From NCBI RefSeq assembly GCF_006345805.1, contig NC_043000.1, positions 120,776,001 through 120,840,000 of the forward strand: a DNA stretch of 64,000 nucleotides, read 5' to 3'. Position numbers and translations under genes: made by a program. Below, piece by piece: positions 845 to 54,765 of the stretch. Each line of letters starts with the position of its first letter. Positions within the stretch are counted from its first letter, which is position 1. Below the pieces are notes generated by a model, which did not search any database, was not told the DNA's origin, and worked only from the letters and a program-made list of their open reading frames with translations. This DNA is from Octopus sinensis. Taxonomy: Eukaryota.

Positions 845-2014
845 TGTCTCAAAACATGAAAACAAGAAAGCATCATACTCAGTCACAAAACAGGCAAAGG
901 AATATCTAAGTGAATTCCGAATACAACCAATTTCGGAATTAGAGATAGACATACAAGAAACAAGCACAGAAAAAGCTAGGCGCATGAAAACCCGTACCAA
1001 AACTGCGGCCTTAGATATTCTGAATAATAAATGGCAAGAAAAACCTCTCTATGGCAAATACCCAAAGAGAGCGAATAATGCAGATATCGACAAAGCCCTG
1101 ACCCTTCAATGGTTAATGGCCTCTGGCTTAAAATCTGAAACAGAGGGGTTTATCATAGCAGCTCAAGATCAATGCCTACCAACAAGAAACTACCAGGCCA
1201 ACATATTAAAGACGGCAGTAGCCCAACATGTCGTGTATGCCGACAACAAAATGAAACCATTGATCATATTGTCTCCAAATGCAGTCTTCTAGCGCCTACA
1301 GAGTACCTCAATAGGCATGATATAGCTGCACAATATATTCACTGGGTAATTTGCAAAAACCTGGATTTGCCCCATGAAAAAAACTGCTGGGAACACAATC
1401 CACCTCCAGTGCTTGAAAATGGCCACATCTCACTCCTCTGGAACTTCACCATTCAAACTGACAGGAAGATAGATGCAAATAGGCCAGACATCATATTGAA
1501 AGACTTCAGACAAAGAACATGCCTCCTCATTGATATGACTGTCCCAATCGATATAAACGTATCTGTCAAGACCTACCAAAAACTGAGCAAATATAAAGAT
1601 CTTGAAATAGAAATCAGCAAAATGTGGAAGCTGAAGACTAAAACAATACCTGTTGTCATAGGTGCCCTGGGAATGATAGCGAAAGGGACTGATTGCTACC
1701 TAACTCAGATACCAGGAAACCCCAAAATGGCAGAAATTCAAAAGATAGTGCTCATGGGAACTGCTCATATCCTACGCAAAATACTCTCTATGTAATCCCA
1801 AGGTTTAAAACAAACTTTTTTTAATTTTTTATTTTATTATTATTTAAATTTTTTAAAATTTAATATTATTTTTATGTATTAGACATTCACTAGTACAACA
1901 CCAAAAAAAAAACCCCCAAATATATGGCACAGAACTTCCAACCTGCTGTCTCTTGAGGTCTCTGGGTGAGACTTGGAGCCAACTTGTACAGACATAAAGC
2001 AAAAGTCAAACATA
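842..2014 (+). mobile_element. 5'-truncated R4/Dong-clade non-LTR retrotransposon (CCHC knuckle + restriction-like endonuclease + 3' UTR)
   Basis: ORFs 984-1292 and 1172-1795 (one frameshift): SGLKSETEGFIIAAQDQ, CRVC..ETIDHIVSKC, RHD, RPDI..LID..K..KYKDL; flanked on both sides by (AAT)n, the known Dong/R4 target. Confidence 0.85.
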
Positions 2015-4012: not shown

Positions 4013-5179
4013 TTTTTCCCCTTTTTTCTTCTTTTTCATTTCTCTTTTCTTTTGTTCCTTTTCCTTTTCTTTTTTTTCTTTTTATTCTTTTTATTTTTTA
4101 TTTTATTTATTTATTTATTTTTGGTTCTTTTCTTCCCTTTTACGATCCCTCTTGATCGAAAACCTACGCCACCCCTCTTTTTCTTTGTTTTTTTTCTTCT
4201 GTTTTTTGTTTTTTTCATCCCTCAAAAGAAAAGCTCTACCTTGTAACTTGTCCCATCTGTGTGCAGCCCTGTGTGGCCAATAAAGAAACTTATCTTTCGA
4301 ATGATTGAAAAAATCAAAAGGAGTTATGTAATAACTTCGTTTGGCTTACAGCCGTTTCTTTTGTGAGAAACGTTACATTCAATCCTGAGTGTTTGTGCAG
4401 CTTCTTATAGCTTTCACAGAGACATTTACGTGAGGCCTTTATGTAAATGACTTCGGTGAAGCTACAATATACTATACAAGCATCCCATTCTAAGTGTAGT
4501 GCTCTTTAGTGCAGGAAGCGCTAACTCAAGTGGCTGCATACTTTCAGATCTTTTTATTCATAAATTAACATTACGTTTTGTATCCACTTGTAGTTATATT
4601 CTAAGCAACGACTGGTTATTATTATCACGATGCCCAAGGCGAAACCATAACGCACACCCACACACACACAGTAAGATAAAGTGTTCCAAAAGACAGAAGC
4701 AATAGGTCTCTACTATTCACTTTCTCATACAAATGTTAAACATGTTTATTAATCATAACTTATACATGCATACACTCACTAAGTGCTTTTATTAATGTAT
4801 TAATATAAGTTGATTTCTTAAGACATTACAATGCCATGAGAAATATATATTTGTAATTATTAATTTTTAGCATACACATACCTTAAAAATTAGTGGAAAT
4901 GACGTAGCAGATTCTGCCACAGAATGTATTAAATTTGTATGCAATTCACATATCTCAGGAATGAAATTTAAATCGTATAAGTAGGACCGTAAAAAAGTAA
5001 CTCAGACTGTAGCTAAATATATCACAGTCTCCTACTTCCAAATAGTCGTTGCCTGTGATATATTTAGAATATCATATTCATTAATTTATTTGACGCCTAT
5101 TTCATAGATTTATGATTTTGTTCTGTTTATTGTTTACCTGCTGTTGGAAGCAGTGATGATTCTCTATTTTGAAGAGAAA

Positions 5180-5390
5180 GGCGGCGAACTGGCAGAAACT
5201 TTAGCACGCCGGACGTAATGCTTAGCAGTATTTCGTCTGCCGCTATGTTCTGGGTCCAAATTCTGCTGAGATCAACTTTACCTTTCATCCTTTCGGGGTC
5301 GATAAATTAAGTATCATTTGCGAACTGGGGTCGATCTAATCGACTAAACTCCTCCCCCAAAATTTCGTGCCTTGTGCCTAGAGTAGAAAA
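5180..5390 (+). mobile_element. tRNA-derived SINE family A, with TSD
   Basis: GGCGGCGARCTGGCAG head, CCTTTCATCCTTTCGGGGTCGATAAA body; flanking direct repeat GATTCTCTATTTTGRAGAGAAA. Confidence 0.85.
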
Positions 5391-10269: not shown

Positions 10270-10323
<54 letters not shown>

Positions 10324-10337
10324 ATATATAAAATATA

Positions 10338-10374
<37 letters not shown>

Positions 10375-10393
10375 ATATATATAAATATATATA

Positions 10394-10427
<34 letters not shown>

Positions 10428-10740
10428 ATATATATAAATATATATGTATATATTATATAATATATAATATATATATATAAAGATATATTAAATATATATA
10501 TGTATATATATATATATATAAATATATATATGATATATATATATAAAGATATATATAAATATATATATATATAATATATATATAATATATATATATATAT
10601 AGATATATATAAATATATATATAGATATATATAAATATATATATAGAATATATATAAATATATATATTAGATATATATAAATATATGTATATATATATAT
10701 ATATAAATATATATAATATATAATATATATATATATATAT
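10269..10740. repeat. Compound (AT)n microsatellite
   Basis: Direct reading. Confidence 0.95.
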
Positions 10741-10903
10741 AAAATATTATTTGAGACAAAAACCACTATTTGCAAAAACAAACAAGGAAGACTTAATCAA
10801 TACATAAAATTAATAAATAGTCATTTATTAAATTTTATGTATTGATTAAGTCTTTCATTGTGTGTTTTGCAAAATAGTGGTTTGTCTCAAATAATATTTA
10901 TAA
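10738..10903. repeat. ~165-bp near-perfect palindrome (4-nt loop AGTC)
   Basis: Arms AAAATATTATTTGAGACAAA..TAATAAAT / ATTTATTA..TTTGTCTCAAATAATATTTT. Confidence 0.85.
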
Positions 10904-14000: not shown

Positions 14001-14389
14001 GTATAATCCTAAAATCTGTCTAAGTTTGGTCCTAGCTATAGTGAACTGTGCTTCCATGTGGTCATTAGTACGTCTTGGGATGTATACTCTTTTGTATACA
14101 CACACTAAATAAACATAGACGCACATAGAGATATAAGCATGCGCAAATGAAGACATACAATAGAAATACAAAATGGCTGACGGTTAGTAAGGAGAGACAC
14201 AAGTAAGTGAGAAGAAAACAAAGGACCACTGATGCGGTCACAGGACTGTGACGAAAGAACTTTGGCCGAAATAAGATTAAGATTAATGTAAAAAATAAAT
14301 ATCACTGAAGCAAAATAACACCAAATATATAGTGCGTGTGTTTTTATTGGCTAAACTGGCAATATGACCATTCCGAAATATAACAATAT
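11080..14389 (-). mobile_element. Decayed Penelope-like element (RT + C-terminal GIY-YIG) with sense 3' pLTR and inverted 5' pLTR
   Basis: Broken ORFs 14171-11855: PTDKSG, LYGLRKDHK, GSMDVVSLYPSID, GAAIG, VYSIRC..YVGETAR..R..EH; ~290-bp inverted repeats at 11134-11421 and 14100-14389. Confidence 0.9.
14224..14267 (+). ncRNA. Hammerhead-like motif in pLTR (variant core; inverted twin at ~11250-11293)
   Basis: GACCA CTGATGC G GTCAC(6)GTGAC GAAA GAACT TTGGCC; A9 replaced by C. Confidence 0.45.
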
Positions 14390-14420
14390 ATAAATATATA
14401 TATATATATATAAAATATAA

Positions 14421-14511
<91 letters not shown>

Positions 14512-14518
14512 TATAAAT

Positions 14519-14607
<89 letters not shown>

Positions 14608-14705
14608 AATATATTATAAATATATATATAAATATATAAATATATATATAAATTATAAAGATATATATAAATATATATATCTTTATATATATAATATATA
14701 TATAT
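14390..14705. repeat. Compound (AT)n microsatellite
   Basis: Direct reading. Confidence 0.95.
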
Positions 14706-20600: not shown

Positions 20601-20621
20601 CACCCAAATGAATAATATCTT

Positions 20622-21000
20622 TTCTACTCTAGACACAAGGCCTGACATTTTGGGGGAGGGGGGACAGTCAATAAGATCGACCCCAGTATGCAACTGGTAC
20701 TTAATTTATCGACCCCGAAAGGATGAAAGGTAAAGTCGACCTCAGCGGAATTTGAACTCAGAACACGAAGATATGAAATGCCTACTTCCTTACTACCCAC
20801 AAGGGGCCAAACACAGAGGGGACAAACAAGGACAGACACACGGATTAAGTCGATTACATCGACTCCAGTGCATAACTGGTACTTAATTTATCGACCCCGA
20901 AAGGATGGAAGGCAAAGTCGACCTCCGCGGAATTTGAACACAGAACGTAGCGGCGGACGAAATACCGCAACGCATTTCGCCCGTCGTGCTAACGCTTCAG
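20622..21000 (-). mobile_element. SINE family A dimer
   Basis: Two bodies in tandem with the two alternative tails. Confidence 0.8.
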
Positions 21001-21480
21001 CTAAGACTGAAATGTGACCATAGCTGATATTGCATCGAAATATCTAATGAAGTTACAGGCAACAATAAAGTGGAATTTGTATTGGAAATTTGCTTTTGTC
21101 TGCGTATTAAAAAGCCAGTAGAGTTATCAACGTAGCTGACTGCCTCACTGATCAGAATCATACATATCGTTAAAGGAACAGCAAAACCGAAAAAGATATC
21201 TCGATATCTGTCTTCTTAAATCATCATTATTAAGTGTCATTTATTCCCAGCAGGTTAAAAAATATCAAGGATTTCCATTAGGATTTTTTCTCTGCCATTT
21301 TTACAAGTTCACCATGTTTTTGTTTAGTCCCGTCCTTGAAGTTATCTAATCAGTTTGTTCTATATTTTCCTCTTGAACATTTGCCATTTATTTTTCCTTC
21401 TAGTAGTATACTTTTTATACCTTCGGCTCTTACTATGTGACCAAAGTACTTTAGCTTGTTTTTAATATTAGCTGAGAGTA

Positions 21481-22290
21481 AGGTAGCGAGCTGTCAGAAT
21501 CGTTAACACACCGGGCGAAATGCTTAGCCGTATTTCGTCTGCCGGTACGTTCTGAGTTCAAATTCCGCCGAGGTCGACTTTGCCTTTCATCCTTTCGGGG
21601 TCGATAAAATTAAGTACCAGTTACGCACTGGGGTCGATGTAATCCACTTAATCCGTTTGTCTGTCCTTGTTTGTTCCCTCTGTGTTTAGCCCCTTGTGGG
21701 AAGTAAAGAAATAGATATTTCATCTGCTGTTACGTTCTGAGTTCAAATTCCGCCGAGGTCGACTTTGTCTTTTATCCTTTCGCGGTCGATTAAATAAGTA
21801 CCAGTTACGCACTGGGGTCTATATAGTCGACTTAATCCGTTTGTCTGTCCTTGTTTGTCTTCTCTGTGTTTAGCCCCTTGTGGGTAGTAAAGAAATAAGT
21901 ATTTCGTCTGCCGCTACGTTCTGAGTTCAAATTCCGCCGAAGTCAACTTTGTCTTTTATCCTTTCGGGGTCGATAAATTAAGTACCAGTTGCGTACTGGT
22001 GTCGATCTAATCGACGGCCTCTCCCCCAAAATGTTGGGCCTTGTACATAGAGTAGAAAAGTATATTAAAGGAGAGTAAGGCAGCAAGCTGGCAGAATTGT
22101 TAGCACGCCGGGCAAAGTGCTTGGTGGCATTTCATCTGTCCTATGCTCTGAGTTCAAATGTCGTCGAAGGCTTCAATCCTTCTAGGGTTGATGAAATAAG
22201 TACCAGTTAAGAACTGAGGGGTTGATATCATCGTCTTAGCCTTTCCCAAAAATTGCTGGCCTTGTTCTAAAATATGAAACCAATATTAGG
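21481..22290 (+). mobile_element. SINE family A tandem trimer plus an older degenerate copy
   Basis: One head, three bodies joined at GAAATA(G)RTATTTC; a second head at ~22078. Confidence 0.85.
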
Positions 22291-22793: not shown

Positions 22794-23210
22794 AGGCGGC
22801 GAGCTGGCAGAGTCGTTAGCAACCCGGCCGAAATGCTTAGCAGTATTTCGTCTGCCGCTACGTTCTGAGTTCAAATTCCGCCGACGTCGACTTTGCCTTT
22901 CATCCTTTCGGAGTCAATTAAATAAGTACCAGTTACGCACTGGGGTCGATATAATCGACTTAATCCGTTTGTCTTTCCTTGTTTGTCCTCTCTGTGTTTA
23001 GCCCCTTGTGCATAGTAAAGAAATAGATAATTCGTCTGCCGCTACGTAATGAGTTCAAATTCTACCGCGATCAACTCTGCCTTTCATCCTTTCGGGATCG
23101 ATTAAATAAGTACAAGTTTCGCACTGGGGTCGATGTAATAAACTTAGTCCCTTTATCTGTCCTTGTTTGTCCCCTCTATGTTTAGCTCCTTGTGGGCAAT
23201 AAAGAATTAA
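22794..23210 (+). mobile_element. SINE family A dimer
   Basis: Head plus two bodies. Confidence 0.85.
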
Positions 23211-24325: not shown

Positions 24326-24946
24326 ATATATCACTTCTCACAAAACGACGAAGAAAGAAATCATGGATTTTTTTTTTTGAGAAAAACAGAATAGATGTGA
24401 CAAAGGCTCTTATGGATGCAAGTATCAGTAAGTGTCAACAATGTTTTGAACTTAAACTGTAGAAGCAAGAGTGACAGCATGCCATGCATTGACTACCAGG
24501 AGGCTGTTATCAGCGCGTAAGTTAGCCTGGAAAATCATTAAAATTATAATCATTAAGATTATATGACAAATAATTCTGCATATTCGCAAAATGAAAAAAG
24601 AAAAGGAAATATATACATCGAGAAAACTCCAATAGGTATGGTATATATTCTAAGTTAACAACCAGTTTTCACTCCATTTCTCCCTTGCTTTAACACCTTT
24701 AAGTGACATATTAAATAATAATGCGCGCTAATAGAAATACTGTCAGAGAATGATGTTAAGTTGTAAGTGGCTGATTATAGACAATTAGAGATACAGCCAG
24801 AAATATTACACTGGATTATCAAAAGCATTGATATGGGATTCGCATTAGAAAAATGCACACCAAGGCAAACCTGAAGAGAGGAAAACTAAGAACGTGACAA
24901 TGATATTTGTTAAAGAAATTAGAACGGACACAAACTTACATATATT

Positions 24947-25890
24947 CTTTTCTACTCTAGGCACAAGGCCTGAAATTTTGGGGGAGGGAGTCAGTCGTTT
25001 AGATCGACGCCAGTACGCAATTGGTACTTAATTTATCGACTCCGAAAGGATGAAAGGCAAAGTCGACCTCGGCGGAATTTGAACTCAGAACTTAAAGACA
25101 GACGAAATAACAAGCGTAAATATTATATTCTTTTCTACTCTAGGCACAATAGCAGAAATTTTTGGGATTGGGGCCAATCGATTAGATCGACACCAGCATG
25201 CAACTGGTACTTAATATATTGACCCCGAAATGATGAAAGGCAAAGTCGACTTCGGCGGAATTTGAACTTAGAACGTAGCGGCAGACGAAATACCTATTTC
25301 TTTACTACCCACTAGAAGCTAAACATTGAGGGGAAAAACAAGGACAGACAAACGGATTAAGTCGATTACATCGACCCCAGTGTGTAACTGATACTTAATT
25401 TATCGACCACGAAATGATGAAAGGCAAAGTCGACCTCAGCGGAATTCGAACTTATAACGTAGCGGCAGACGAAATACCTATTTCTTTTTTACCCACAAAG
25501 GGCTAAACACAGAGGAAACAAACAAGGACAGACAAACGGATGAAGTCGATTACATCGACGTCAGTGCGTAACTGGTACTTAATTTATCGACCACGAAATG
25601 ATGAAAGGCAAAGTCGACTTCGGCGGAATTTGAACTCAGAACTTAAAGACAGACGAAATAACAAGCGTAAATATTATATTCTTTTCTACTCTAGGCACAA
25701 TAGCAGAAATTTTTGGGATTGGGGCCAATCGATTAGATCGACACCAGCATGCAACTGGTACTTAATTTATCGACCCCGAAAGGATGAAAGGCAAAGTTGA
25801 CCTCGGCGGAATTTGAACTCAGAACGTAGCGGCAGACGAAATATCGCCAAGCATTTCGCCCGGCGTGCTAACGTCTCTGCCCGCTCGCCG
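24947..25890 (-). mobile_element. SINE family A tandem array (about five bodies)
   Basis: Single head at ~25890, alternating tails, internal ~550-bp-period duplication. Confidence 0.85.
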
Positions 25891-26554
25891 CTGTATAAAC
25901 TTCCATATATTGAGGAATCAATGAGGTATGCGAAGCACAACACAAATAATAGAACATTTAGGAAAGACAATTATAAATGCATTTGATTAATCTTCCAACA
26001 GAGTTAGGTACAAATAAATAAGTAAATAAATAAGATAAAATAGGAGGATGCTAGTCTTAATAATACATTATATTTATAATACTCTCAGTTGAAACTAAAT
26101 TACTTAGCAAGAGTTGACAGGAAAACAAAAAAAGAATGACAACTTAAAAATTTATCATCCGAAATCTGATCGGTAATGGCCTTATGCAAATAATATTCTT
26201 TCATGAAATATCTATTGTAGGACTAAAAACATATGTCTAGTAAAGGAGAACAAATGGAGAATAAATTTACAGAAGTTCAAAGAGTTAAATAAAAATTGTT
26301 TCATCTTCAAGATAGAAGAGATATAAAAACCTGGAGCTAACATGACATTTTTTGCTGTGAGCGAAATGGAGAAATAAATAGAGAAAATATATAAAAGAGA
26401 AAACTTAGCTAAAAATATTCTTACAATATGTCATCATGACGCAATGGCAGAATATGCTTGACCAAATAACTGCGAAGATATAGATAAAAGAAAATTCCAA
26501 CACTGGCTGAAAAGTTCAGGACTGCAAACTGAGACGTCAAGATTATTAATTATA

Positions 26555-26785
26555 TATTTCTTTACTATCCACAAGGGGCTTAAACACAGAGGGGACAAAC
26601 AAGGACAAACAAAGGGATTAAGTCGATTACATCGACCCAGTCCGAAACTGGTACTTTACTTATCGACCCCGAGAGGATGAAAGGCAAAGTCGACCTCGGC
26701 GGAATTTGAACTCAGAACGTAACGACAGACGAATTACCGCTAAGCATTTCGCCCGACGTGCTAACGTTTCTGCCAGCTCACCGCC
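26555..26785 (-). mobile_element. SINE family A, full monomer
   Basis: GGCGGTGAGCTGGCAG head through GTAAAGAAATA tail. Confidence 0.9.
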
Positions 26786-26804
26786 TCACTACGAAGTAAC
26801 ACAC

Positions 26805-26878
26805 TGCCCCAAGTGAGGTTCGAACTCACGACTTCTGGTTTACGAAACCAGTGCTCTAAACCACTGAGCTATTGGAGC
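26805..26878 (-). tRNA. trnT-CGU: tRNA-Thr(CGT), complete cloverleaf
   Basis: GCTCCAA TA GCTC AGTGGTTTA GAGC A CTGGT TTCGTAA ACCAG AAGTC GTGAG TTCGAAC CTCAC TTGGGGC A; all four stems pair (one G-U); A and B boxes intact. Confidence 0.9.
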
Positions 26879-27848
26879 TCCACAAGATTATTATTAATTA
26901 TAGCTTAGAATGAGAAGCATTCTAGCAGTAACAAACAAAAGTAAATAATGAAACAGAATACAGTAAACCACAGTAGATTATGTGCAGGTTGGTAAGAAAT
27001 AGTGGACTTCCTTCTCAAGGGATTGCAGTCTTAGGCGAGTTAAAATGCATCCACAAGCATGATAGTTGGGACTTGCACTGGAGTTTATCTGAAGATTATG
27101 AAATGCCAACAGGAGAGTGAATGAATTAATATTCCGAAACAAGGACGAATCCACAATGATGTGTGATATTTCAGTACAAGCAGGCAAAGAGGTCAGATGT
27201 AATGACGCCGTCATTCTTGCTATGAATCATTCGAAACAAGTGCCTCCTAGTTAAAGCATCATGCACAATCAGACGATGATGTACGCTTCTCAAAAAATGC
27301 AGAAATGATTTAGAGATAAAGAAAAAAGCTACAGCTAAATGTTATATGAACACGGATACTGAAAACAAGCAATCTTAATTAGAAAAGATTAAACCATGCA
27401 GATAAAGGAATAACCAAGATTCCAGCTTTCCGAATAGCAGAGCATAGAGAAAATAGCTCTACAAGGAACTTCACACGTTTCTAACACATTTGTGATACAA
27501 TAAAACTACAAAATCGAAACAAATCATCAATCTATAGTTTATTGATGGTCTCCTCCTTCCTCAGTAACTATTATATGCAGCACAGAGCAAGAAGCAATTT
27601 CATAGGCGCTGTCTATACTCAGAGTCGTGGATATGGTTCAGTGGAGGCGCAGCTATGGCTTTTGCTGTTTCTTCTCCTCCTAAGCAAAAAAGTATTTGTG
27701 AATCTTCCTCTAACTCATGCCATTCCAGTAATTTCTGCCCTAAAACACCATTCTAACTTTCTTTCTCTTTTCATCCACAATGGAGTACAATCCTGGCATA
27801 GATATGTCATACTCGAGAGTCATTCTAATATATATATTGTTAAATGTA

Positions 27849-28062
27849 AGGCGGCGAGCTGGCAGAACCGTTAGCACGCAGGGCGAAATGCGTAGCTGTA
27901 TTTCGTCTGCCGTTACGTTCTGAGTTCAAATTCCGCCGAGGTCCACTTTGCCTTTCATCCTTTCGGGATCGATAAATTAAGTACCAGTTGCGCACTGGGG
28001 TCGATGTAATCGACTTAATCCGTTGGTCTGTTCTTGTTTGTCCTCTCTGCGTTTAGACCCTT
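27849..28062 (+). mobile_element. SINE family A
   Basis: Head and body match; tail truncated. Confidence 0.85.
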
Positions 28063-28564
28063 GTTAAATTTTTCCTTTTCGCTCACTGGCCCTGCGTACG
28101 GCTCAGTAAAGTTAACCAATGTCAATGGCTCATGGATTCTTTACGGTACGCATGCAATTATCTGTGACTCTTGTATATTATTGCGGCTCCTGTTTGTGGC
28201 TAGACTTGTAGCACATCAGGCGCTTGTTTTCTCACCCCTGTCCTCTCTCAAAAACTAGACACTCACTTTCATAAAACCTTTCCTCATGGATGATGTCCAC
28301 ATACTAAACGCCGATCAGTATCACCCTCTAACTACTGCTTTGATGGGATATGGAATTCCCTTCTACTTTTCGAGCGGCAGAACTACTTTCCTATCTTTTT
28401 CTTCTTCGTCCACCATATCGTATAATAATGTTTCTGGTGTATTTCCCCTTTCCTTGGAATTGGTTGGTATACAATCAATTTCTCTAATTGCGCTCATGAT
28501 GCTGTAGCTGCTTTTATAATTAAAGGTATTAGCGATTCTACAACAAATGATTTTCATTTTTGTT

Positions 28565-30811: not shown

Positions 30812-31045
30812 AAGGCAGCGAGCTGGCAGAAACGTGAGCACCCCGGACGAAATGGTTAGTGGTATTTCGTCTGCCGTTACGTTCTGAGTTCAAATTCCGC
30901 CGAGGTCGACTTTGCCTTTCATCCCTTCGGGGTCGATTAAATAAGTACCAGTTACGTACTGAGGTCGATATAATCGACATAATCCGTTTGTCTGTCCTTG
31001 TTTGTCCTTTCTGTGTTTAGCCCCTTGTGGGTAGTAAAGAAATAG
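30812..31045 (+). mobile_element. SINE family A nested in an older minus-strand SINE
   Basis: Flanking direct repeat GGTATTTATTTTATCGA. Confidence 0.85.
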
Positions 31046-31856: not shown

Positions 31857-32270
31857 TATTCTCTATTGCCCACAAGGATCTAAGCATTGCGGGGACAAAC
31901 AAGAACAGACAAACGGATTAAGTCGATTATATAGACCCCAGTGCGTAACTGGTTCTTATTTAATCGATCCCAATTGGATGAAAGCAAAGTCGACCTCGGC
32001 AGAATTTGAACTCAGAACGTAGCAGCAGAAGAAATACCTATTTCTTTACTACCCACAATGGTCTAAACAGAGAGAGGGCAAATAAGGACAGACAAAGGCA
32101 TTAAGTCGATTATATCGACCCTAGTGCGTAACTGGTACTTAATTTATCGACCCCGAAAGGCTGAAAGGCAAAGTCGACCTCGGTGGAAATTTAACTCAGA
32201 ACGTAACGGCAGACGAAATACCGCTAAGCATTTCGCCCGGCGTGCTAACAATTCTGCCAGCTCGCCGCCT
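31857..32270 (-). mobile_element. SINE family A dimer with TSD
   Basis: Flanking AACATACGYACTGGTTCT at ~31839 and ~32272. Confidence 0.85.
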
Positions 32271-33057: not shown

Positions 33058-33450
33058 TCTGCGAGCTGGCAGAATCGTTAGCACGTCGGGCTAAATGCTT
33101 AGCGGTATTTCGTCTGCCATTTCGTTCTGAGTTCAAATTCCACCGAGGTCGACTTTACCTTTCATCCTTTCGGGGTCGATAAATTAAGTACCACTCAAGC
33201 ACTGGGGTTGATATAATCGACTTAATCCGTGTGTCCCCTCTATGTTTAGCCTCTTGTGGGTAGTAAAGAAATAGGTATTTCGTCTGCTGCTACGTTCTAA
33301 GTTCAAATTCCACCGAGGTCAACTTTGCTTTTCATCCTTTCGGAGTCGATAAATTAAGTACCAATTGCGTGCTGGTGTCGATCTAAACGACTGACTCCCT
33401 CCCCAAAAATTTCGGGCCGTATGCCTAGAGTAAAAGAGTGTTTAGCCTCT
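33058..33450 (+). mobile_element. SINE family A dimer
   Basis: Tail-1 unit then tail-2 unit. Confidence 0.8.
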
Positions 33451-36444: not shown

Positions 36445-37035
36445 AGAGGCGCAGGTGTGGATGTGTGGTAAGAAGCTTGCTTCGCAATCACAAGATTTTG
36501 CGTTCGGTCCTAATACGTGGCATTGGGCATGTGCCCAACTACTAAATCTTGGGCCCGAACAATGCTTTGTGAGTGGATTTGGAAAACGGAAACGGAAAAA
36601 AGGCCCATCGTATATATATGTAAAGGGTGGTGAGATGGTAGAATCGTTAGCAAGCCGGTCGAAATGCTTAGAGGTATTTCGTCTGCCGCTACGTTGTGAG
36701 TTCAAATTCCGCCGAGGTCGACTTTGCCTTTCATTCTTTCGGGGTCGATTAAATAAGTATCAGTTACGCACTGTGGTTGATATAATCGACTTAATCCGTC
36801 TGTTTCTCCTTGTTTGTCTCCTCTGTGTTTAGCCCTTTGTGGGTAGTAAAGAAATAGGTATTTCGTCTGCCGTTGCGTTCTGAGTTCAAATTCCGCCGAG
36901 GTCGACTTTGCTTTTCGTCTTTTCGGGGTCAATTAAATAAGTAACAGTTACGCACTGGGGTCGATGTAATCGACTTAATCCGTTTGTCTGTCCTTGTTTG
37001 TCCCCTCTACGTTTAGCCCCCTGTAGGCAACAAAG

Positions 37036-37091
<56 letters not shown>

Positions 37092-39855: not shown

Positions 39856-42498
39856 GGCGCCACCGCCGCCTCAACATATCCCCGGCTGAGCTCTCGGCTC
39901 TTCGTTCTATCCAACGGCGCGCTGACATTGTCATCAAACCGGCTGACAAGGGTGGGGCTGTGGTGGTGTGTGGCGAGCGGACCTCTACAGGGCCGAGGCG
40001 CTCCGCTAACTCAATGACACCTCTTTCTACTCCCCTCTGTCCTCTGACCCCACGCTTAGCTTCCAACAGACGGTATCCTCTACTGTCCACGACCTCATCT
40101 CGTCCTCCCGTCTCCCCCATACCGCATCCAACCTCATTGTCCGAACCCCACGCACCCCCACAATTTACTTCCTCCCCCAAATCCACAAACCCAACAACCG
40201 TCTCCGCATGTAACTGCCCCACGGAGCTCATCTCAAAATACCTCGACCGTGTCCTTGCCCCCTAGTGGCGGCTCATCCCTCCCACATCCACGACACCAAC
40301 CAATGCTCTCCGGCTTTTCAACTCTTTCTCCTTTCCTCCCGGCTCCTCCAAAATCCTTTTTACAATGGACATCCAGAGCCGTCATCCCTCACCATGAAGG
40401 ACTGCGGGCACTTCAACACTTTCTCGACCTCCGCCCCAACCCCGAACCCAACACCTCCACACTCATTCGTCTGGCCGAACTTGTCCTTTCTCTTAACTGC
40501 TTCTCGTTCGCGGGCGAGTTCTACCAATAGTCTCGGGAGTGGTCATGGGAACGCGAATGGGCCCCAACTATGCGAACCTGTTCGTTGGCTATGTTGAGGC
40601 CCAAATATTCTCTAGTTTCACTGGTCCCACTCCCGAACTATACGGTCATTACATTGACGACATTATCGGTGCCACTTCACTCTCCCGTGAACATCTAGAT
40701 TCCTTCCTCTCTTTCGTTTAATCCTTCCATCCTGCCCTCCACTTCACCTCCACTATCTCCAACACCTCTGTCTCCTTCCTCGACATTTCGGTCAGCATTC
40801 ATCACTCCACTCTTATCACCTCCATTTACTACAAACACACAGACTCACACTCATACCTAAACTTCTCTTCCTCCCACCCCAAACACACCAAGCTTTCCAT
40901 CCCTATTCCCAATTACTCCGTCTACGTAGGCTCTGTAGTGACGACCATGACTTTGGGACTCAGTCTCAACTCATGGCTCGCCACTTCATCCTATGTGGAT
41001 ACCCCCTCACCACCATCCACACCGCCCTTGCCAGAGCACGTTCCGTAGACCGTGAATCTGCTCTCTCCCCCCGAACCCGCCCTGCAGTCTCCCGCCTCCC
41101 TTTTCCCCTCACTTACCACCCCACCACCCTACCTCTCCAACGCACCATTCTTCGAGCTTTCCGGCATCTCCAGTCCGACCCGTCCACTTCACACCTCTTT
41201 CCTAACCGACCCCTCCCCTCTTTCAAACGTGCCCATAACCTACGAGACCTCTTGGTCCACAGCTTCTTCCCTGACCCTAGCTCCCAACCTGGCTCGTTCC
41301 CCTGCTCCCGCCCACGTTGCCGCACTTGCCCTTACCTCTCCAACACCACCGTCCTCACCGGCACCCATCATCAACACTATCGCATCATCTACTCCTTCAC
41401 CTGCTCTCTCTGCCATTCCCTGTACATCGGACAAGCGGGACGCCGCTTGGCTGACCGGCTCGCGGAACACCTCCGAGACATCTGCGTTGCTAATGACACA
41501 CCGGTCTCACGCCATTTCCGCTCCGCCGGTCACTCCTTGCAACACCTGTCTGTGTTCGGATTGTCCTTGCACAGAGGCCATCCGGATTCCCTGTGAGCAG
41601 GGATTAATCTTCTCTCTTCGCTCTTTTACGCCATTTGGTCTCAACTCTCCCCCCCTTTTCATCTACCCCCCTTTTCATCTAACCTCCCTCCCGACAGTCC
41701 TTCTTCTTTTCACCCCGACTCTCTTTCCCTCCTCTTCCCTTCTTTCCCTTCTTCCCTCTTCTTCTTTCTTCTTTCTTCTTCCTTCTTCCCTTTCTCTCTT
41801 TCTCTCTGCTCCCTCCCTTCCCTTATCTCTCTCCCCCTCCCCTCCTCCCCTCCTCTCTCTTCTCTCCCCACAACCCCCACTCTACTACAACCCCCAGCCG
41901 AACCCACACCCCACATGGGCTTTCTCCACTCTCGCCCCCACCTCCCCACAACATCACACCACACCACACTACGCTACACCATACGACATTACACATCACA
42001 TTACAACACACCGCCCACAGCACACAGCCCTACACCCATCCCCACATCTTTACACCTACACATACATACACATATCATATCACAACACACCACCCACACA
42101 CCCATCCCCATATCTCCACACCCACACATACATACACACGTCCAGACTACCAGCCCTCTTTCTCACGCACATACATACTCTCTTATACACACACGCACCT
42201 TCATGTTGGGGCGATGTCACTTGACCCTATTATCTCCCCTACTATCCCTCTAGCGTCTAACGTCTGACCTCTGATCTCTGACTTCTGCCTGAAATCAGAA
42301 CGCCATGTTGGACCGTTAGCTCCTACACGCATTTTTTCTCTCTCCTTGTTTCTTTTCTGTGTATCTTTCTGTCGAAAAGCGTAGGCTCGAAACGTAAAAG
42401 ACTTGTTTTATTTCTATTCCTGAGCGCCATACTAATACAATTGTTTGTTTGTACTCCACCTGCCTTCGTCTTTTGTTTATTTTCGTAAACCTTCCCGT
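39856..42498 (+). mobile_element. 5'-truncated Neptune-type Penelope-like element (RT, Cys linker, GIY-YIG, 3' UTR, pLTR)
   Basis: KPADKG, MGTRMGPNYANLFVG, YIDD, FLDI, PCSRPRCRTCPY, YIGQAGRRL.DRL.EH, EQ.LIF.L....P.GLN; several frameshifts and stops; hammerhead-like motif at 42364-42401. Confidence 0.9.
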
Positions 42499-42560
<62 letters not shown>

Positions 42561-43464
42561 TATACATATTTCTATATTAGAAGCTATTCACTAGAGAGCC
42601 AGAGAGTTAATCACTGCAAAACCAGCAAAGCAGTTGCTACCAAACCAGTAATGAAGACACTACGCGTATACCAAGTGAGATTGTCAGTATGATAATAGTT
42701 ACGGAACCAGTAATCTAGTTTTAAGACAACCAGCAAGCAACGATGAAGTCTATACATTTGCCCATAAGGCTTAATGATAAAGAATTTTCGGAGTCATCTA
42801 CTTCGTTGCTCATCACAAGAATAATGTTTGGAAACATGTGATATCTTTCCTAATAGCGTATTTGGCTCTGGTACGTTCTGAGTTCTAATTCCGCCGAGGT
42901 TGACGTTGCCTTGCATCCTTCCGAGGTCGATAAATTAAATACTAGTGAAATACTGGAATCGATGAAATGGAGTATCGCCCTCGCCACAAATTCCAGGCCT
43001 TGTGCTGATAATAGAAATTATTATTTTGTGTGAAATAGGCAGAAGAATACTTAACATTTTTCTGACGTACCTTATTGACCTAAAATTCTACTGAGATCAG
43101 CTTTGCCTTTCATTATTATATAAAATAAGTGCCGTTTAAGCACTGGAGTCAATGTAATTGACTAACCTTCACCCATCACAAGATTTCGGTATCTATGCCT
43201 ATTGGAAGAAGGCGTTATTTAGCGCGATAAGTCGGTGGCCAACTGTCAGAATTGTTGGCACGCCGGGCACAGTGCTTAGCGGGATTTCTTCCGTGTTTAC
43301 ATTCTAAGTTCAAATTCTGCCAAGTTCGACTATCCTTCTCCACGAAAGTTTCAGGCCTTGTATCGATAGAAGAAAGAATTATTTAGTGTGAGAGGTAGGC
43401 TGTGAATTGGCAAAATCGACAGAGCGTCGAAGATAATATCATGTGGTATTTTATCTGACAAGGG

Positions 43465-43880
43465 CGCTGAGCTGGCAGAAAAGTTAGAACGGCGGGCGAA
43501 ATGCTTAGCAGTATTTCGTCTGCCGTTACGTTCTGAGTTCAAATTCTGCCGAGATCGACTTTGCCTTTCATCCTTTCAGGGTCGATTAAATAAGTACCAG
43601 TTACGCACTGGGGTCGATATAATCGACTTAATCCGTTTGTCTGTGCTTGTTTGTCCCCTCTGTGTTTAGCCCCTTGTGGGTAGTAAAGAAATAGGTATTT
43701 CATCTGCCGCTACGTTCTGAGTTCAAATTCCGCCGAGGTCGACTTTGCCTTTCATCCTTTCGGGGTCAATTAAATAAGTACCAGTTACGCACTGGAGTCG
43801 ATATAATCGAATTAATCCGCTTGTCTGTCCCTGTTTGTCCTCTCTGTGTTTAGCCCCTTGTGGGTAGTAAAGAAATAGGT
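43465..43880 (+). mobile_element. SINE family A dimer
   Basis: Head plus two tail-1 bodies. Confidence 0.85.
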
Positions 43881-47442: not shown

Positions 47443-47615
47443 GCCGCCAGTCGATTAGATCGACCCCAGTGCGCAACTGGTTCTTAATTCATCGACCCCG
47501 AAATGATGAGAAGCAAAGTCGACCTCGGCGGATTTGAACTCAGAATGTAGTGGCATGCGAAATACCCCTAAGCATTTCGCCCGGCATGCTAACGATTCTG
47601 CCAGCTTGCCGCCTT
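47443..47615 (-). mobile_element. SINE family A, partial
   Basis: Head and body match. Confidence 0.75.
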
Positions 47616-50198: not shown

Positions 50199-50430
50199 CT
50201 ATTTCTTTACTACCCACAAGGGGCTAAACACAGAGGAGACAAATAAGGACAGACAGACGGATTAAGTCGATTATATCGACCCCAGTGCGTAACTGGTACT
50301 CAATTTATCGACCCCGAAAGGATGAAAGGCAAAGTCGACCTCGGCGGAATTTGAACTCAGAACGTAACGGCAGACGAAATACTGCTGAGCATTTCGCCCG
50401 GCGTGCTAACAATTCTGCCAGCTCGCCGCC
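50199..50430 (-). mobile_element. SINE family A nested in an older SINE A
   Basis: Flanking direct repeat TTCGATGAAATAAGTACC. Confidence 0.85.
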
Positions 50431-54550: not shown

Positions 54551-54765
54551 AGGTGGCGGGCTGGCAGAAACGTTAGCACGCCGGGCGAAATGCTTAGCAG
54601 TATTTCGTCTGCCGTTGCGTTCTGAGTTCAAATCCGCCGAGGTCGTCTTTGCCTTTCATCCTTTCGGGGTCGATTAATAAGTACCAGTTATGCACTGGGG
54701 TCGATTGTCGCTCCTTGTTTGTCCCTTCTGTGTGTAGCCCCTTGTGGGCAGTAAAGAATTAGGTA
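54551..54765 (+). mobile_element. SINE family A
   Basis: Monomer with a small internal deletion. Confidence 0.85.

What the first reader, a model, noticed from the sequence alone, without database searches (positions are those of the whole stretch)
26538..26902. Intact tRNA-Thr(CGT) and a full SINE enclosed by one target-site duplication
On the minus strand the order is TATAATTAATAATAATCTTG (26902-26883), a 4-nt leader TGGA, a perfect 74-nt tRNA-Thr cloverleaf, an ~19-nt trailer GTGTGTTACTTCGTAGTGA, a complete SINE A, then TATAATTAATAATCTTG (26554-26538). The flanking repeats differ only by one AAT unit, and the unit interrupts an old LINE fragment. There is no CCA and no T4 terminator until ~26513, beyond the SINE. 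The simplest reading is that an unprocessed pre-tRNA read through into a downstream SINE and the chimera was retrotransposed using the SINE tail. That is SINE-mediated mobilisation of a potentially functional tRNA gene, or the birth of a new tRNA-SINE dimeric family. An RT template switch onto a pre-tRNA is the alternative.
Basis: partly seen in the sequence, partly recalled or inferred. Interest (0 to 1): 0.8.

Follow-up and report, generated by a model that had tools for sequence, protein, structure and literature searches.

The report
tRNA-Thr gene retrocopied together with a SINE
An intact threonine tRNA gene and a full short interspersed element (SINE) were pasted into an old LINE relic as one reverse-transcribed unit, which shows in a single locus how a SINE can carry a neighbouring tRNA gene to a new site; whether it has spread further could not be checked.

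Summary
On the minus strand, a 20-nt and a 17-nt copy of one target sequence enclose TGGA, a canonical 74-nt tRNA-Thr(CGT) (Rfam 70.4 bits), a 19-nt trailer with no T-run, and a full-length 231-nt SINE ending at the family's normal 3' end.

The repeat is a real target-site duplication. With the insert and one repeat copy removed, the flanks read in frame and without gaps across the junction, as the C-terminal region of a non-LTR retrotransposon protein. Keeping both copies or neither breaks that alignment.

So one retroposition event inserted a pre-tRNA–SINE chimera, primed on the SINE tail. I favour Pol III read-through from a donor tRNA gene with a SINE in its trailer (about 0.6) over reverse-transcriptase template jumping (about 0.2). 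My reasons:
- the junction has no oligo-T;
- the tRNA keeps its leader and trailer;
- the same window holds at least four multi-unit SINE insertions with a single duplication each, whose downstream units are older.

Copy number, donor locus and expression could not be tested, because no searchable collection holds this SINE. The organism was not identified; octopus is my guess from memory. This is a clean example of a known kind of event, of moderate interest.

The parts
26883..26902 (-). 5' copy of the target-site duplication, TATAATTAATAATAATCTTG (20 nt; one extra AAT)
   Evidence: Read directly. The 11-mer core is unique to the two repeat sites. In the empty-site test the 17-nt form fits the LINE homologues without a gap, while the 20-nt form needs a 1-residue gap, so the AAT was probably gained at or after insertion.
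26879..26882 (-). 4-nt leader TGGA between the duplication and tRNA position +1. It is either a pre-tRNA 5' leader from the Pol III start site or non-templated bases.
   Evidence: Read directly. Other copies carry 0-8 extra nt at this junction.
26805..26878 (-). tRNA-Thr, anticodon CGT, 74 nt. All stems are paired (one U3-G70 wobble), the A box (TAGCTCAGTGG) and B box (GAGTTCGAACC) are canonical, and no CCA is encoded.
   Evidence: ARAGORN; Rfam tRNA 70.4 bits, E 1.3e-14; cloverleaf as the minimum-free-energy fold.
26786..26804 (-). 3' trailer GTGTGTTACTTCGTAGTGA with no T-run. It contains GTTACTTCGT, a near-match to the SINE's preferred target GGTAYTT(CGT), 15 nt before the SINE start. The last 3-7 nt may be SINE 5' leader.
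   Evidence: Read directly. Target motif taken from the duplications of other copies. No other copy of the trailer exists in the window.
26555..26785 (-). Full-length SINE (consensus positions 1-231), 93.5% identical to the window consensus, by my count about 9-10 private changes, ending ...AAAGAAATA
   Evidence: blastn against the window and the consensus.
26538..26554 (-). 3' copy of the target-site duplication, TATAATTAATAATCTTG (17 nt), starting at the first base after the SINE
26510..26513 (-). First T4 run downstream of the tRNA (291 nt lie between the tRNA 3' end and it). It is the likely Pol III terminator for any transcript started at the tRNA or the SINE promoter.
   Evidence: Scan for T runs.
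26447..27037 (+). Decayed C-terminal coding region of a non-LTR retrotransposon (WL.SSGL.SETEGFIIAAQDQ...C..C..ET.DH region next to the zf-RVT domain). It lies on the opposite strand and is interrupted by the insert at 26538-26902.
   Evidence: The joined flanks align to the window's own LINE fragment at 1053-1229 (E 7e-5). Pfam on the raw frames gave nothing.

Best explanation
One target-primed reverse-transcription event inserted the cDNA of a chimeric Pol III transcript into a decayed LINE copy and duplicated 17 nt of the target.

The transcript began about 4 nt upstream of a tRNA-Thr(CGT) gene at a donor locus. It ran through the tRNA and a trailer that has no T-run, and on into a full-length SINE that had earlier inserted between that tRNA gene and its terminator. 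The partner LINE's reverse transcriptase recognised the SINE's 3' tail, started there, and copied back to the 5' end of the RNA. In effect the SINE 5'-transduced the tRNA gene.

Shown: the anatomy, the true target-site duplication, the exact SINE 3' boundary, the LINE target, and the lack of a terminator inside the unit.
Inferred: that the two parts were joined by co-transcription, and that a donor locus exists.

The new copy keeps intact A and B boxes and sits behind an AT-rich, TATA-like stretch. Any transcript from it would have to run about 290 nt through the SINE to the first T4, so it could yield tRNA-Thr after RNase P and RNase Z cleavage. That is not shown.
For: 1. The repeat is a real duplication enclosing the whole unit.
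- With one 17-nt copy kept, the flanks align without gaps across the junction to LINE homologues: 65 hits, best 48.5 bits.
- With the 20-nt copy kept, a 1-residue gap is needed.
- With both copies kept, alignments stop at the junction (12 hits). With none, 16-28 gap positions are needed (7 hits).

2. The duplication starts at the base after the SINE's canonical end, and its length is within the family's 12-18 nt range.

3. The SINE alone has no duplication: the trailer and the 3' flank are unrelated.

4. The 5' end lies 4 nt before tRNA +1, as expected for a Pol III start set by the tRNA's A box.

5. The tRNA has leader and trailer, no CCA, and no oligo-T at the trailer-SINE junction or anywhere in the unit. 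That fits read-through. It does not fit a terminated or mature tRNA as the acceptor of a jump.

6. The trailer carries GTTACTTCGT 15 nt before the SINE. Four of 10 independent duplications of this family begin with GGTAYT. The trailer therefore looks like the duplication left by a SINE insertion just behind the donor tRNA gene.

7. The window shows that composite retrocopies are common.
- At least four multi-unit SINE insertions each carry one duplication around the whole array.
- Their units mix subfamily variants and are no more alike than unrelated copies.
- The downstream unit is more diverged from an independent consensus: 90.3% against 94.0%, in 6 of 7 arrays, p = 0.007.
- This is expected if an older genomic copy was co-transcribed behind a younger element.
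Against: - No donor locus and no second copy could be looked for, so co-transcription is not directly shown.
- End-to-end template jumping gives the same architecture. A pre-tRNA whose U-tail had been trimmed would leave no T at the junction.
- The evidence from the arrays is by analogy. Those arrays could also be explained by jumps onto RNAs of an older subfamily.
- The target-motif match in the trailer has one mismatch, and I estimate a chance probability of roughly 0.04-0.08.
- The leader and trailer cannot be checked against a real tRNA-Thr gene of this species.
- The focal SINE's 6.5% divergence alongside an undamaged tRNA could mean selection, a diverged donor copy, or luck. I cannot separate these.
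Confidence: 0.6

Rival explanations
1. Template jump. The reverse transcriptase copied a free SINE RNA to its 5' end. It then jumped onto the 3' end of an unrelated pre-tRNA-Thr molecule and copied it to its 5' end. The chimeric cDNA was integrated with one duplication.
For: - The architecture is the same as observed: a full-length 3' partner, a sense-oriented small RNA as the 5' partner, and one shared duplication.
- Extra nucleotides at 5' junctions of other copies are typical of enzymes that jump.
- Template switching is the accepted origin of PittSINE's new tRNA head (PMC5729268) and a proposed origin of 5' extensions of SINEU-2 (PMC4494074).
- tRNA/LINE-1 chimeras exist in mammals (bioRxiv 10.1101/2025.02.02.635956).
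Against: - The acceptor would have to be a rare species: a pre-tRNA that still has its 5' leader and a 16-19-nt trailer but no 3' oligo-U. Mature tRNA is far more abundant, and nothing from it is seen (no CCA).
- The mammalian tRNA/L1 chimeras are mostly half tRNAs in antisense orientation, unlike this one.
- The trailer's resemblance to a SINE target site is unexplained under this model.
Confidence: 0.22
2. The locus is one copy of an already established dimeric tRNA-Thr/SINE family. A composite master element, however it first formed, is transcribed from the tRNA promoter and has been retroposed many times.
For: - The unit has what such a master needs: an intact Pol III promoter at its 5' end, no internal terminator, and a tail that the reverse transcriptase recognises.
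- Composite SINE units do propagate in this genome.
- Dimeric SINEs are a known outcome (SINEBase, PMC3531059; the Twin SINE is cited there).
Against: - There is one copy in 64 kb, against 14 full-length and about 44 total SINE segments.
- No tRNA-Thr remnant lies upstream of any other copy.
- A perfectly canonical tRNA is more typical of a recent capture than of a SINE head that has drifted.
- This could not be tested genome-wide.
Confidence: 0.12
3. Two unrelated events or a DNA-level process. Either a resident tRNA gene later received a SINE 19 nt downstream and the flanking repeats are a coincidence of AT-rich sequence, or a segmental duplication or DNA transposon carried both.
For: The repeat is AT-rich and microsatellite-like, and the window is full of AT and AAT repeats.
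Against: - The paralogous empty-site test shows the LINE target had a single copy of the 17 nt and nothing in between.
- The 3' repeat starts at the exact SINE end, and the 5' repeat ends 4 nt from the tRNA.
- By my estimate the chance of such a repeat is about 3e-5.
- A resident tRNA gene inside a LINE open reading frame would need its own insertion.
- 17 nt is far longer than the duplications made by DNA transposons.
Confidence: 0.04

Closest known systems
5' transduction by non-LTR retroelements (SVA and L1; Damert et al. 2009, as cited in PMC4494074)
   Same: Transcription starts at a promoter upstream of the element. The upstream flank and the element are reverse transcribed as one RNA and inserted with one duplication around both.
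   Different: Here the upstream promoter is a Pol III tRNA gene and the carrier is a tRNA-derived SINE with a specific, non-poly(A) tail. The transduced piece is a complete and possibly working gene. The donor locus was not found.
Chimeric retrogenes made by template switching (Buzdin et al. 2003; U6/L1; tRNA/LINE-1 chimeras, bioRxiv 10.1101/2025.02.02.635956)
   Same: A small Pol III RNA lies at the 5' side and a retroelement at the 3' side, enclosed by one duplication of 9-19 nt.
   Different: The mammalian tRNA/L1 chimeras are mostly half tRNAs in antisense orientation. This one is a full pre-tRNA in sense orientation with leader and trailer and no U-tract at the junction.
Twin SINE of Culex pipiens (Feschotte et al. 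[quoted passage not shown]
   Same: Two Pol III units are transcribed as one precursor and retroposed as one element.
   Different: Twin is an established multi-copy family of two tRNA-related halves. Here the first half is an undamaged tRNA gene and only one copy is known.
PittSINE (Suh et al. 2017, PMC5729268) and the U1-like 5' extensions of SINEU-2 (Kojima 2015, PMC4494074)
   Same: An existing SINE acquires a new small-RNA head at its 5' end.
   Different: In PittSINE the old head was replaced. Here the new tRNA is added in front of a complete SINE, with a trailer between them. Those papers infer the event from families; this is a single event with intact boundaries.
Quasidimeric and complex SINEs as defined by SINEBase (PMC3531059)
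   Same: The multi-unit SINE insertions in this window, and the tRNA-SINE unit, have the layout of quasidimeric and dimeric SINEs.
   Different: [quoted passage not shown]

Membership tests
LINE-mediated (target-primed) retroposed insertion | A target-site duplication encloses the whole insert, and the target held one copy before insertion | tested here: met
   Empty-site constructs compared with 73 database proteins, nearly all LINE homologues. One 17-nt copy gives gap-free alignments across the junction (65 hits). Both copies or none break them.
LINE-mediated (target-primed) retroposed insertion | The 3' boundary lies at the element's canonical tail, and the duplication length is typical of the family | tested here: met
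   The insert ends ...AAAGAAATA like 13 other copies. Duplications of other copies are 12-18 nt; here it is 17-20 nt.
5' transduction / read-through chimera | No transcription terminator between the upstream promoter and the element's tail | tested here: met
   No T4 on the minus strand from 26902 to 26514. The first T4 is at 26513-26510.
5' transduction / read-through chimera | A donor locus where the transduced flank and the element are contiguous | not testable with these tools
   The junction 21-mer is absent from the metagenome, genome and viral collections. The SINE core 29-mer is also absent from the first two, so these nulls say nothing. Protein look-ups also found nothing.
Template-switch chimeric retrogene | The junction lies at the natural 3' end of the acceptor RNA: oligo-U for a primary Pol III transcript, CCA for a mature tRNA | tested here: not met
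   The trailer ends ...GTAGTGA directly before the SINE start, with no T-run and no CCA. A trimmed or internal acceptor end is not excluded.
Complex (dimeric) SINE family, SINEBase definition | At least 100 interspersed copies per genome | not testable with these tools
   One copy in the 64-kb window, against 14 full-length monomers. No genome of this taxon could be reached.
Complex (dimeric) SINE family, SINEBase definition | A head with at least 60% identity to a tRNA, and an internal Pol III promoter | tested here: met
   The head is a complete tRNA-Thr with consensus A and B boxes.
Functional nuclear tRNA-Thr gene | Canonical cloverleaf, invariant bases, A and B boxes, and the Thr anticodon | tested here: met
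   70.4 bits on Rfam tRNA. U8, A14, G18G19, U33 and T54-T55-C56 are present by my reading of the sequence. G1-C72 and C2-G71 are present; by my knowledge these are Thr identity elements.
Functional nuclear tRNA-Thr gene | A T4 or longer terminator shortly after the gene | tested here: not met
   The first T4 starts 292 nt after the tRNA 3' end, beyond the SINE. A long precursor could still be processed.
Functional nuclear tRNA-Thr gene | Expression and aminoacylation | not testable with these tools
   This needs tRNA sequencing or Pol III ChIP.

The most novel reading that the evidence does not exclude
The unit is a founder or member of an active dimeric tRNA-Thr/SINE family. In this genome, SINEs lack their own terminator and carry a tail that the reverse transcriptase recognises. 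They would then routinely transduce upstream Pol III genes, spreading working tRNA-Thr(CGT) genes and creating new SINE heads. The many multi-unit SINE retrocopies would be the everyday product of the same process.
Probability: 0.12. Interest if true: 0.7.

Novelty: new member of a known kind. Interest (0 to 1): 0.4.

Why it matters
New SINE heads and dimeric SINEs are usually inferred from old, drifted families. Here every boundary of the event is still readable:
- an undamaged tRNA gene with its leader and trailer;
- a complete SINE;
- a verified target-site duplication;
- a target whose pre-insertion state can be reconstructed from paralogues.

The locus shows concretely how a SINE without its own terminator can move a neighbouring Pol III gene. 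That is a route both to dispersal of tRNA genes and to new composite SINEs. Together with the multi-unit SINE insertions in the same window, it suggests that read-through with capture of a downstream tail is common in this genome. That can be tested directly on the genome assembly.

Tried and rejected
Looking for other copies or the donor locus:
- Exact-protein look-up of the 36-aa open reading frame spanning the junction, and of a 390-aa open reading frame, found nothing on record.
- A protein search with the 64-aa frame spanning SINE, trailer and tRNA gave no hits, so the database holds no reading frames from this SINE.
- The junction 21-mer is absent from the metagenome, genome and viral contigs. 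The control SINE-core 29-mer is also absent from the first two, so these are uninformative nulls, not evidence that the unit is single-copy.
- Large ENA (European Nucleotide Archive) contigs carrying homologues of the LINE fragment (L001-L004) contain no copy of the SINE and belong to another taxon.

Identifying the organism:
- The 390-aa open reading frame has one weak, unnamed hit.
- The SINE string appears in no paper.
- Octopus is only my recollection of similar SINEs. It is loosely consistent with SINEs covering 10.8% of the window, against 11.6% reported for Octopus vulgaris (PMC13282606).

Other dead ends:
- Pfam on the raw frames of the joined flanks gave nothing. The LINE identity emerged only from tblastn against the window's own LINE fragment.
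- The phage DNA search was irrelevant and matched only a bacterial-phage tRNA-Thr at 80%.
- An empirical background rate for flanking repeats (2%) was dominated by real tandem repeats and SINE arrays, so I did not use it.

Readings rejected:
- A duplication around the SINE alone: no match between the trailer and the 3' flank.
- A chance repeat.
- Local tandem duplication as the origin of the 184-nt arrays: their units are no more alike than unrelated copies.

Full report
**What is there**

Read on the minus strand, 26902-26538 has the following order:
- TATAATTAATAATAATCTTG (26902-26883);
- TGGA (26882-26879);
- a 74-nt tRNA (26878-26805);
- GTGTGTTACTTCGTAGTGA (26804-26786);
- a 231-nt SINE (26785-26555);
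- TATAATTAATAATCTTG (26554-26538).

ARAGORN calls the tRNA as tRNA-Thr(CGT), and it is the only tRNA in the 64 kb. Infernal gives 70.4 bits on Rfam RF00005, against a gathering score of 29. None of the SINE heads in 25000-28500 reaches even E = 1 in that search. The tRNA folds as a cloverleaf on its own. All four stems are paired, with a single U3-G70 wobble. By my reading the invariant bases and both Pol III boxes are canonical, and no CCA is encoded.

**The SINE family**

The window holds about 44 segments of the same SINE, covering 10.8% of its bases, and 14 of them are full-length or nearly so. A consensus of 231 nt was built from these. The focal copy covers positions 1-231 at 93.5% identity. 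It starts at GGCGG like the others and ends ...AAAGAAATA like the others. No other copy has any tRNA-Thr sequence in front of it.

Other copies carry target-site duplications of 12-18 nt that begin at the base after ...GAAATA. They have 0-8 extra nucleotides between the 5' duplication and the SINE start. The focal unit differs in one respect only: 97 nt containing a complete pre-tRNA lie where other copies have those few extra bases.

**Is the repeat a real target-site duplication?**

The 11-mer core occurs only at the two sites, against 0.11 expected in the whole window. By my estimate the chance of a 17-mer with one indel within 500 nt is about 3e-5.

The stronger test came from the flanks. 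They are unique in the window as DNA. Joined with one repeat copy, however, they translate on the plus strand into a sequence that aligns with a LINE fragment at window 1053-1229 (E 7e-5). That fragment lies next to an open reading frame with a weak zf-RVT match. It has 72 database homologues, several carrying PF13966.

I built four versions of the empty site and compared each with those homologues:
- One 17-nt copy: 65 hits, and the best alignments run without gaps across the junction (for example P0043, 76 residues, 0 gaps, 48.5 bits).
- One 20-nt copy: 51 hits, each top alignment with one extra gap and a lower score.
- Both copies: 12 hits, with alignments stopping at the junction.
- No copy: 7 hits, needing 16-28 gap positions.

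The target therefore held exactly one copy of the 17 nt. The extra AAT in the 5' copy is a later or concurrent slip.

**What this establishes**

One retroposition event inserted tRNA, trailer and SINE together, primed at the SINE tail.
- The SINE alone has no duplication.
- A resident tRNA gene that later received a SINE is excluded by the empty-site test.
- 17 nt is far too long for a DNA-transposon duplication.

I put this general statement at about 0.9.

**How the chimera formed**

Two mechanisms give the same product. One is co-transcription from a donor locus, which is read-through or 5' transduction. The other is a jump of the reverse transcriptase from the 5' end of a SINE RNA onto a pre-tRNA. 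I favour read-through, for four reasons.

1. The junction has no oligo-T, and the unit has no T4 anywhere. The first T4 is at 26513-26510. A primary Pol III pre-tRNA ends in U's, and a mature tRNA ends in CCA and lacks leader and trailer. The observed form is what an unterminated transcript would contain.

2. The 5' end lies 4 nt before tRNA +1, where the tRNA's own promoter would start transcription.

3. The trailer contains GTTACTTCGT 15 nt before the SINE.
   - Four of 10 independent duplications of this family begin with GGTAYT (c50, c30, c54 and the dimer at 43463).
   - The motif occurs only 59 times on both strands of the window, mostly inside SINEs.
   - The trailer therefore looks like the duplication left when a SINE inserted just behind the donor tRNA gene.
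   - I estimate the chance probability of this match at 0.04-0.08, so it is only suggestive.

4. Composite retrocopies are common in this window.
   - Tandem Repeats Finder finds 184-nt periodic arrays at six places.
   - At four places the whole array, positions [1-231][48-231], is enclosed by a single duplication: 22795-23209 (AATATATGTTCTAC), 31859-32269 (GAACCAGTRCGTATGTT), 36626-37040 and 43463-43877 (GGTATTTTATCTGAC).
   - Units of one array are no more alike than copies at different loci (84-94% against a mean of 87%), and they mix two subfamily variants. They are therefore neither local duplications nor copies of one master.
   - The downstream unit is more diverged from a consensus built only from single copies: 90.3% against 94.0%, in 6 of 7 arrays, p = 0.007 (one search used the first consensus).
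   - Both units have been at the present locus equally long, so the extra divergence must predate the retroposition. That fits a young SINE nested at the GGTATTT motif (position 48) of an older copy, read through and primed on the older copy's tail.
   - The focal unit follows the same logic, with a tRNA gene as the leading Pol III unit.

This support is by analogy. A jump onto a trimmed pre-tRNA is not excluded.

**Function**

The copy keeps everything a tRNA gene needs internally, and it lies behind an AT-rich, TATA-like stretch supplied by the target. It has no nearby terminator. Any transcript would be about 370 nt and would need RNase Z to release the tRNA. In the minimum-free-energy fold of that long RNA, the anticodon and T arms persist but the acceptor stem does not.

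Whether the intact tRNA beside a 6.5%-diverged SINE reflects selection cannot be decided. The SINE may already have been diverged at the donor locus.

**What could not be done**

No searchable collection holds this SINE. The junction and the SINE core are both absent from the metagenome and genome contigs, and the junction is also absent from the viral contigs. Protein routes gave nothing. ENA contigs with related LINE fragments lack the SINE. Copy number, the donor locus, orthologous empty sites and expression therefore remain open. The organism was not identified with the tools. An octopus is my guess from memory, loosely consistent with the SINE load and divergence reported for O. vulgaris (PMC13282606).

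**Comparison with known cases**

- The event has the logic of 5' transduction, known for SVA and L1 and cited as one origin of 5' extensions in SINEU-2 (PMC4494074).
- The alternative is a template-switch chimera, as proposed for PittSINE (PMC5729268) and seen in mammalian tRNA/L1 chimeras. Those, however, are mostly antisense half tRNAs.
- If it has multiplied, it would be a complex SINE in the SINEBase sense (PMC3531059), like the Twin SINE.

**Verdict**

This is a new, unusually clean example of a known kind of event, not a new kind. Interest 0.4. It would rise to about 0.7 if a genome-wide search shows a propagating family or routine transduction of Pol III genes.

Noticed in passing
window 22795-23209 (+), 31859-32269 (-), 36626-37040 (+), 43463-43877 (+); also 21486-22015, 24987-25891 (-), 33061-33398, 20666-21001 (-): Multi-unit SINE insertions with a 184-nt period (SINE positions 48-231 repeated). 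Four are enclosed as a whole by one target-site duplication, so they were retroposed as units. Units within an array are no more alike than unrelated copies, and the downstream unit is more diverged.
   Followed up: partly
window 50200-50430 (-), 30814-31044 (+), 54552-54761 (+), 43463-43877 (+): Insertion-site preference: 4 of 10 independent duplications start with GGTAYT. The SINE itself carries this motif at position 48 (sense) and at positions 136-120 (antisense). The copies at 50200 and 30814 sit inside older antisense SINE copies exactly at that motif, so the family tends to nest into itself.
   Followed up: partly
window 22016-22075, 24930-24986 (-), 33399-33450, 20610-20665 (-): A second SINE type shares positions 1 to about 165 with the main family but continues with a different tail (CTCCCCCAAAATTTCAGGCCTTGTGCCTAGAGTAGAAAAG). 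Several copies elsewhere also stop matching near position 165 (5180-5348, 47449-47613, 25729-25891).
   Followed up: no
window 4239-4288 (+): A 47-nt stretch 78% identical to the SINE's 3' tail (...CCAATAAAGAAAC), with no SINE head or body in front of it. It could be the 3' end of the partner LINE or of another element sharing the tail.
   Followed up: no
window 1053-1795 (+): A better-preserved fragment of the same kind of non-LTR retrotransposon C-terminal region (WQEKPLYGKY...ETEGFIIAAQDQ), followed by an open reading frame with a weak zf-RVT match. It has 72 database homologues, nearly all unnamed, from large ENA contigs of other organisms.
   Followed up: partly
window 41052-42224 (+): A 390-aa open reading frame with no Pfam match and only one weak database relative (35% identity over 39% of the query, E 1.8e-6).
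   Followed up: no
window 10270-10741, 14386-14705 and many others: A very high load of microsatellites: (TA)n of 470 and 320 bp, several (AAT)n, (TAC)n and (ATCT)n. The AAT slip in the focal duplication fits this background.
   Followed up: no
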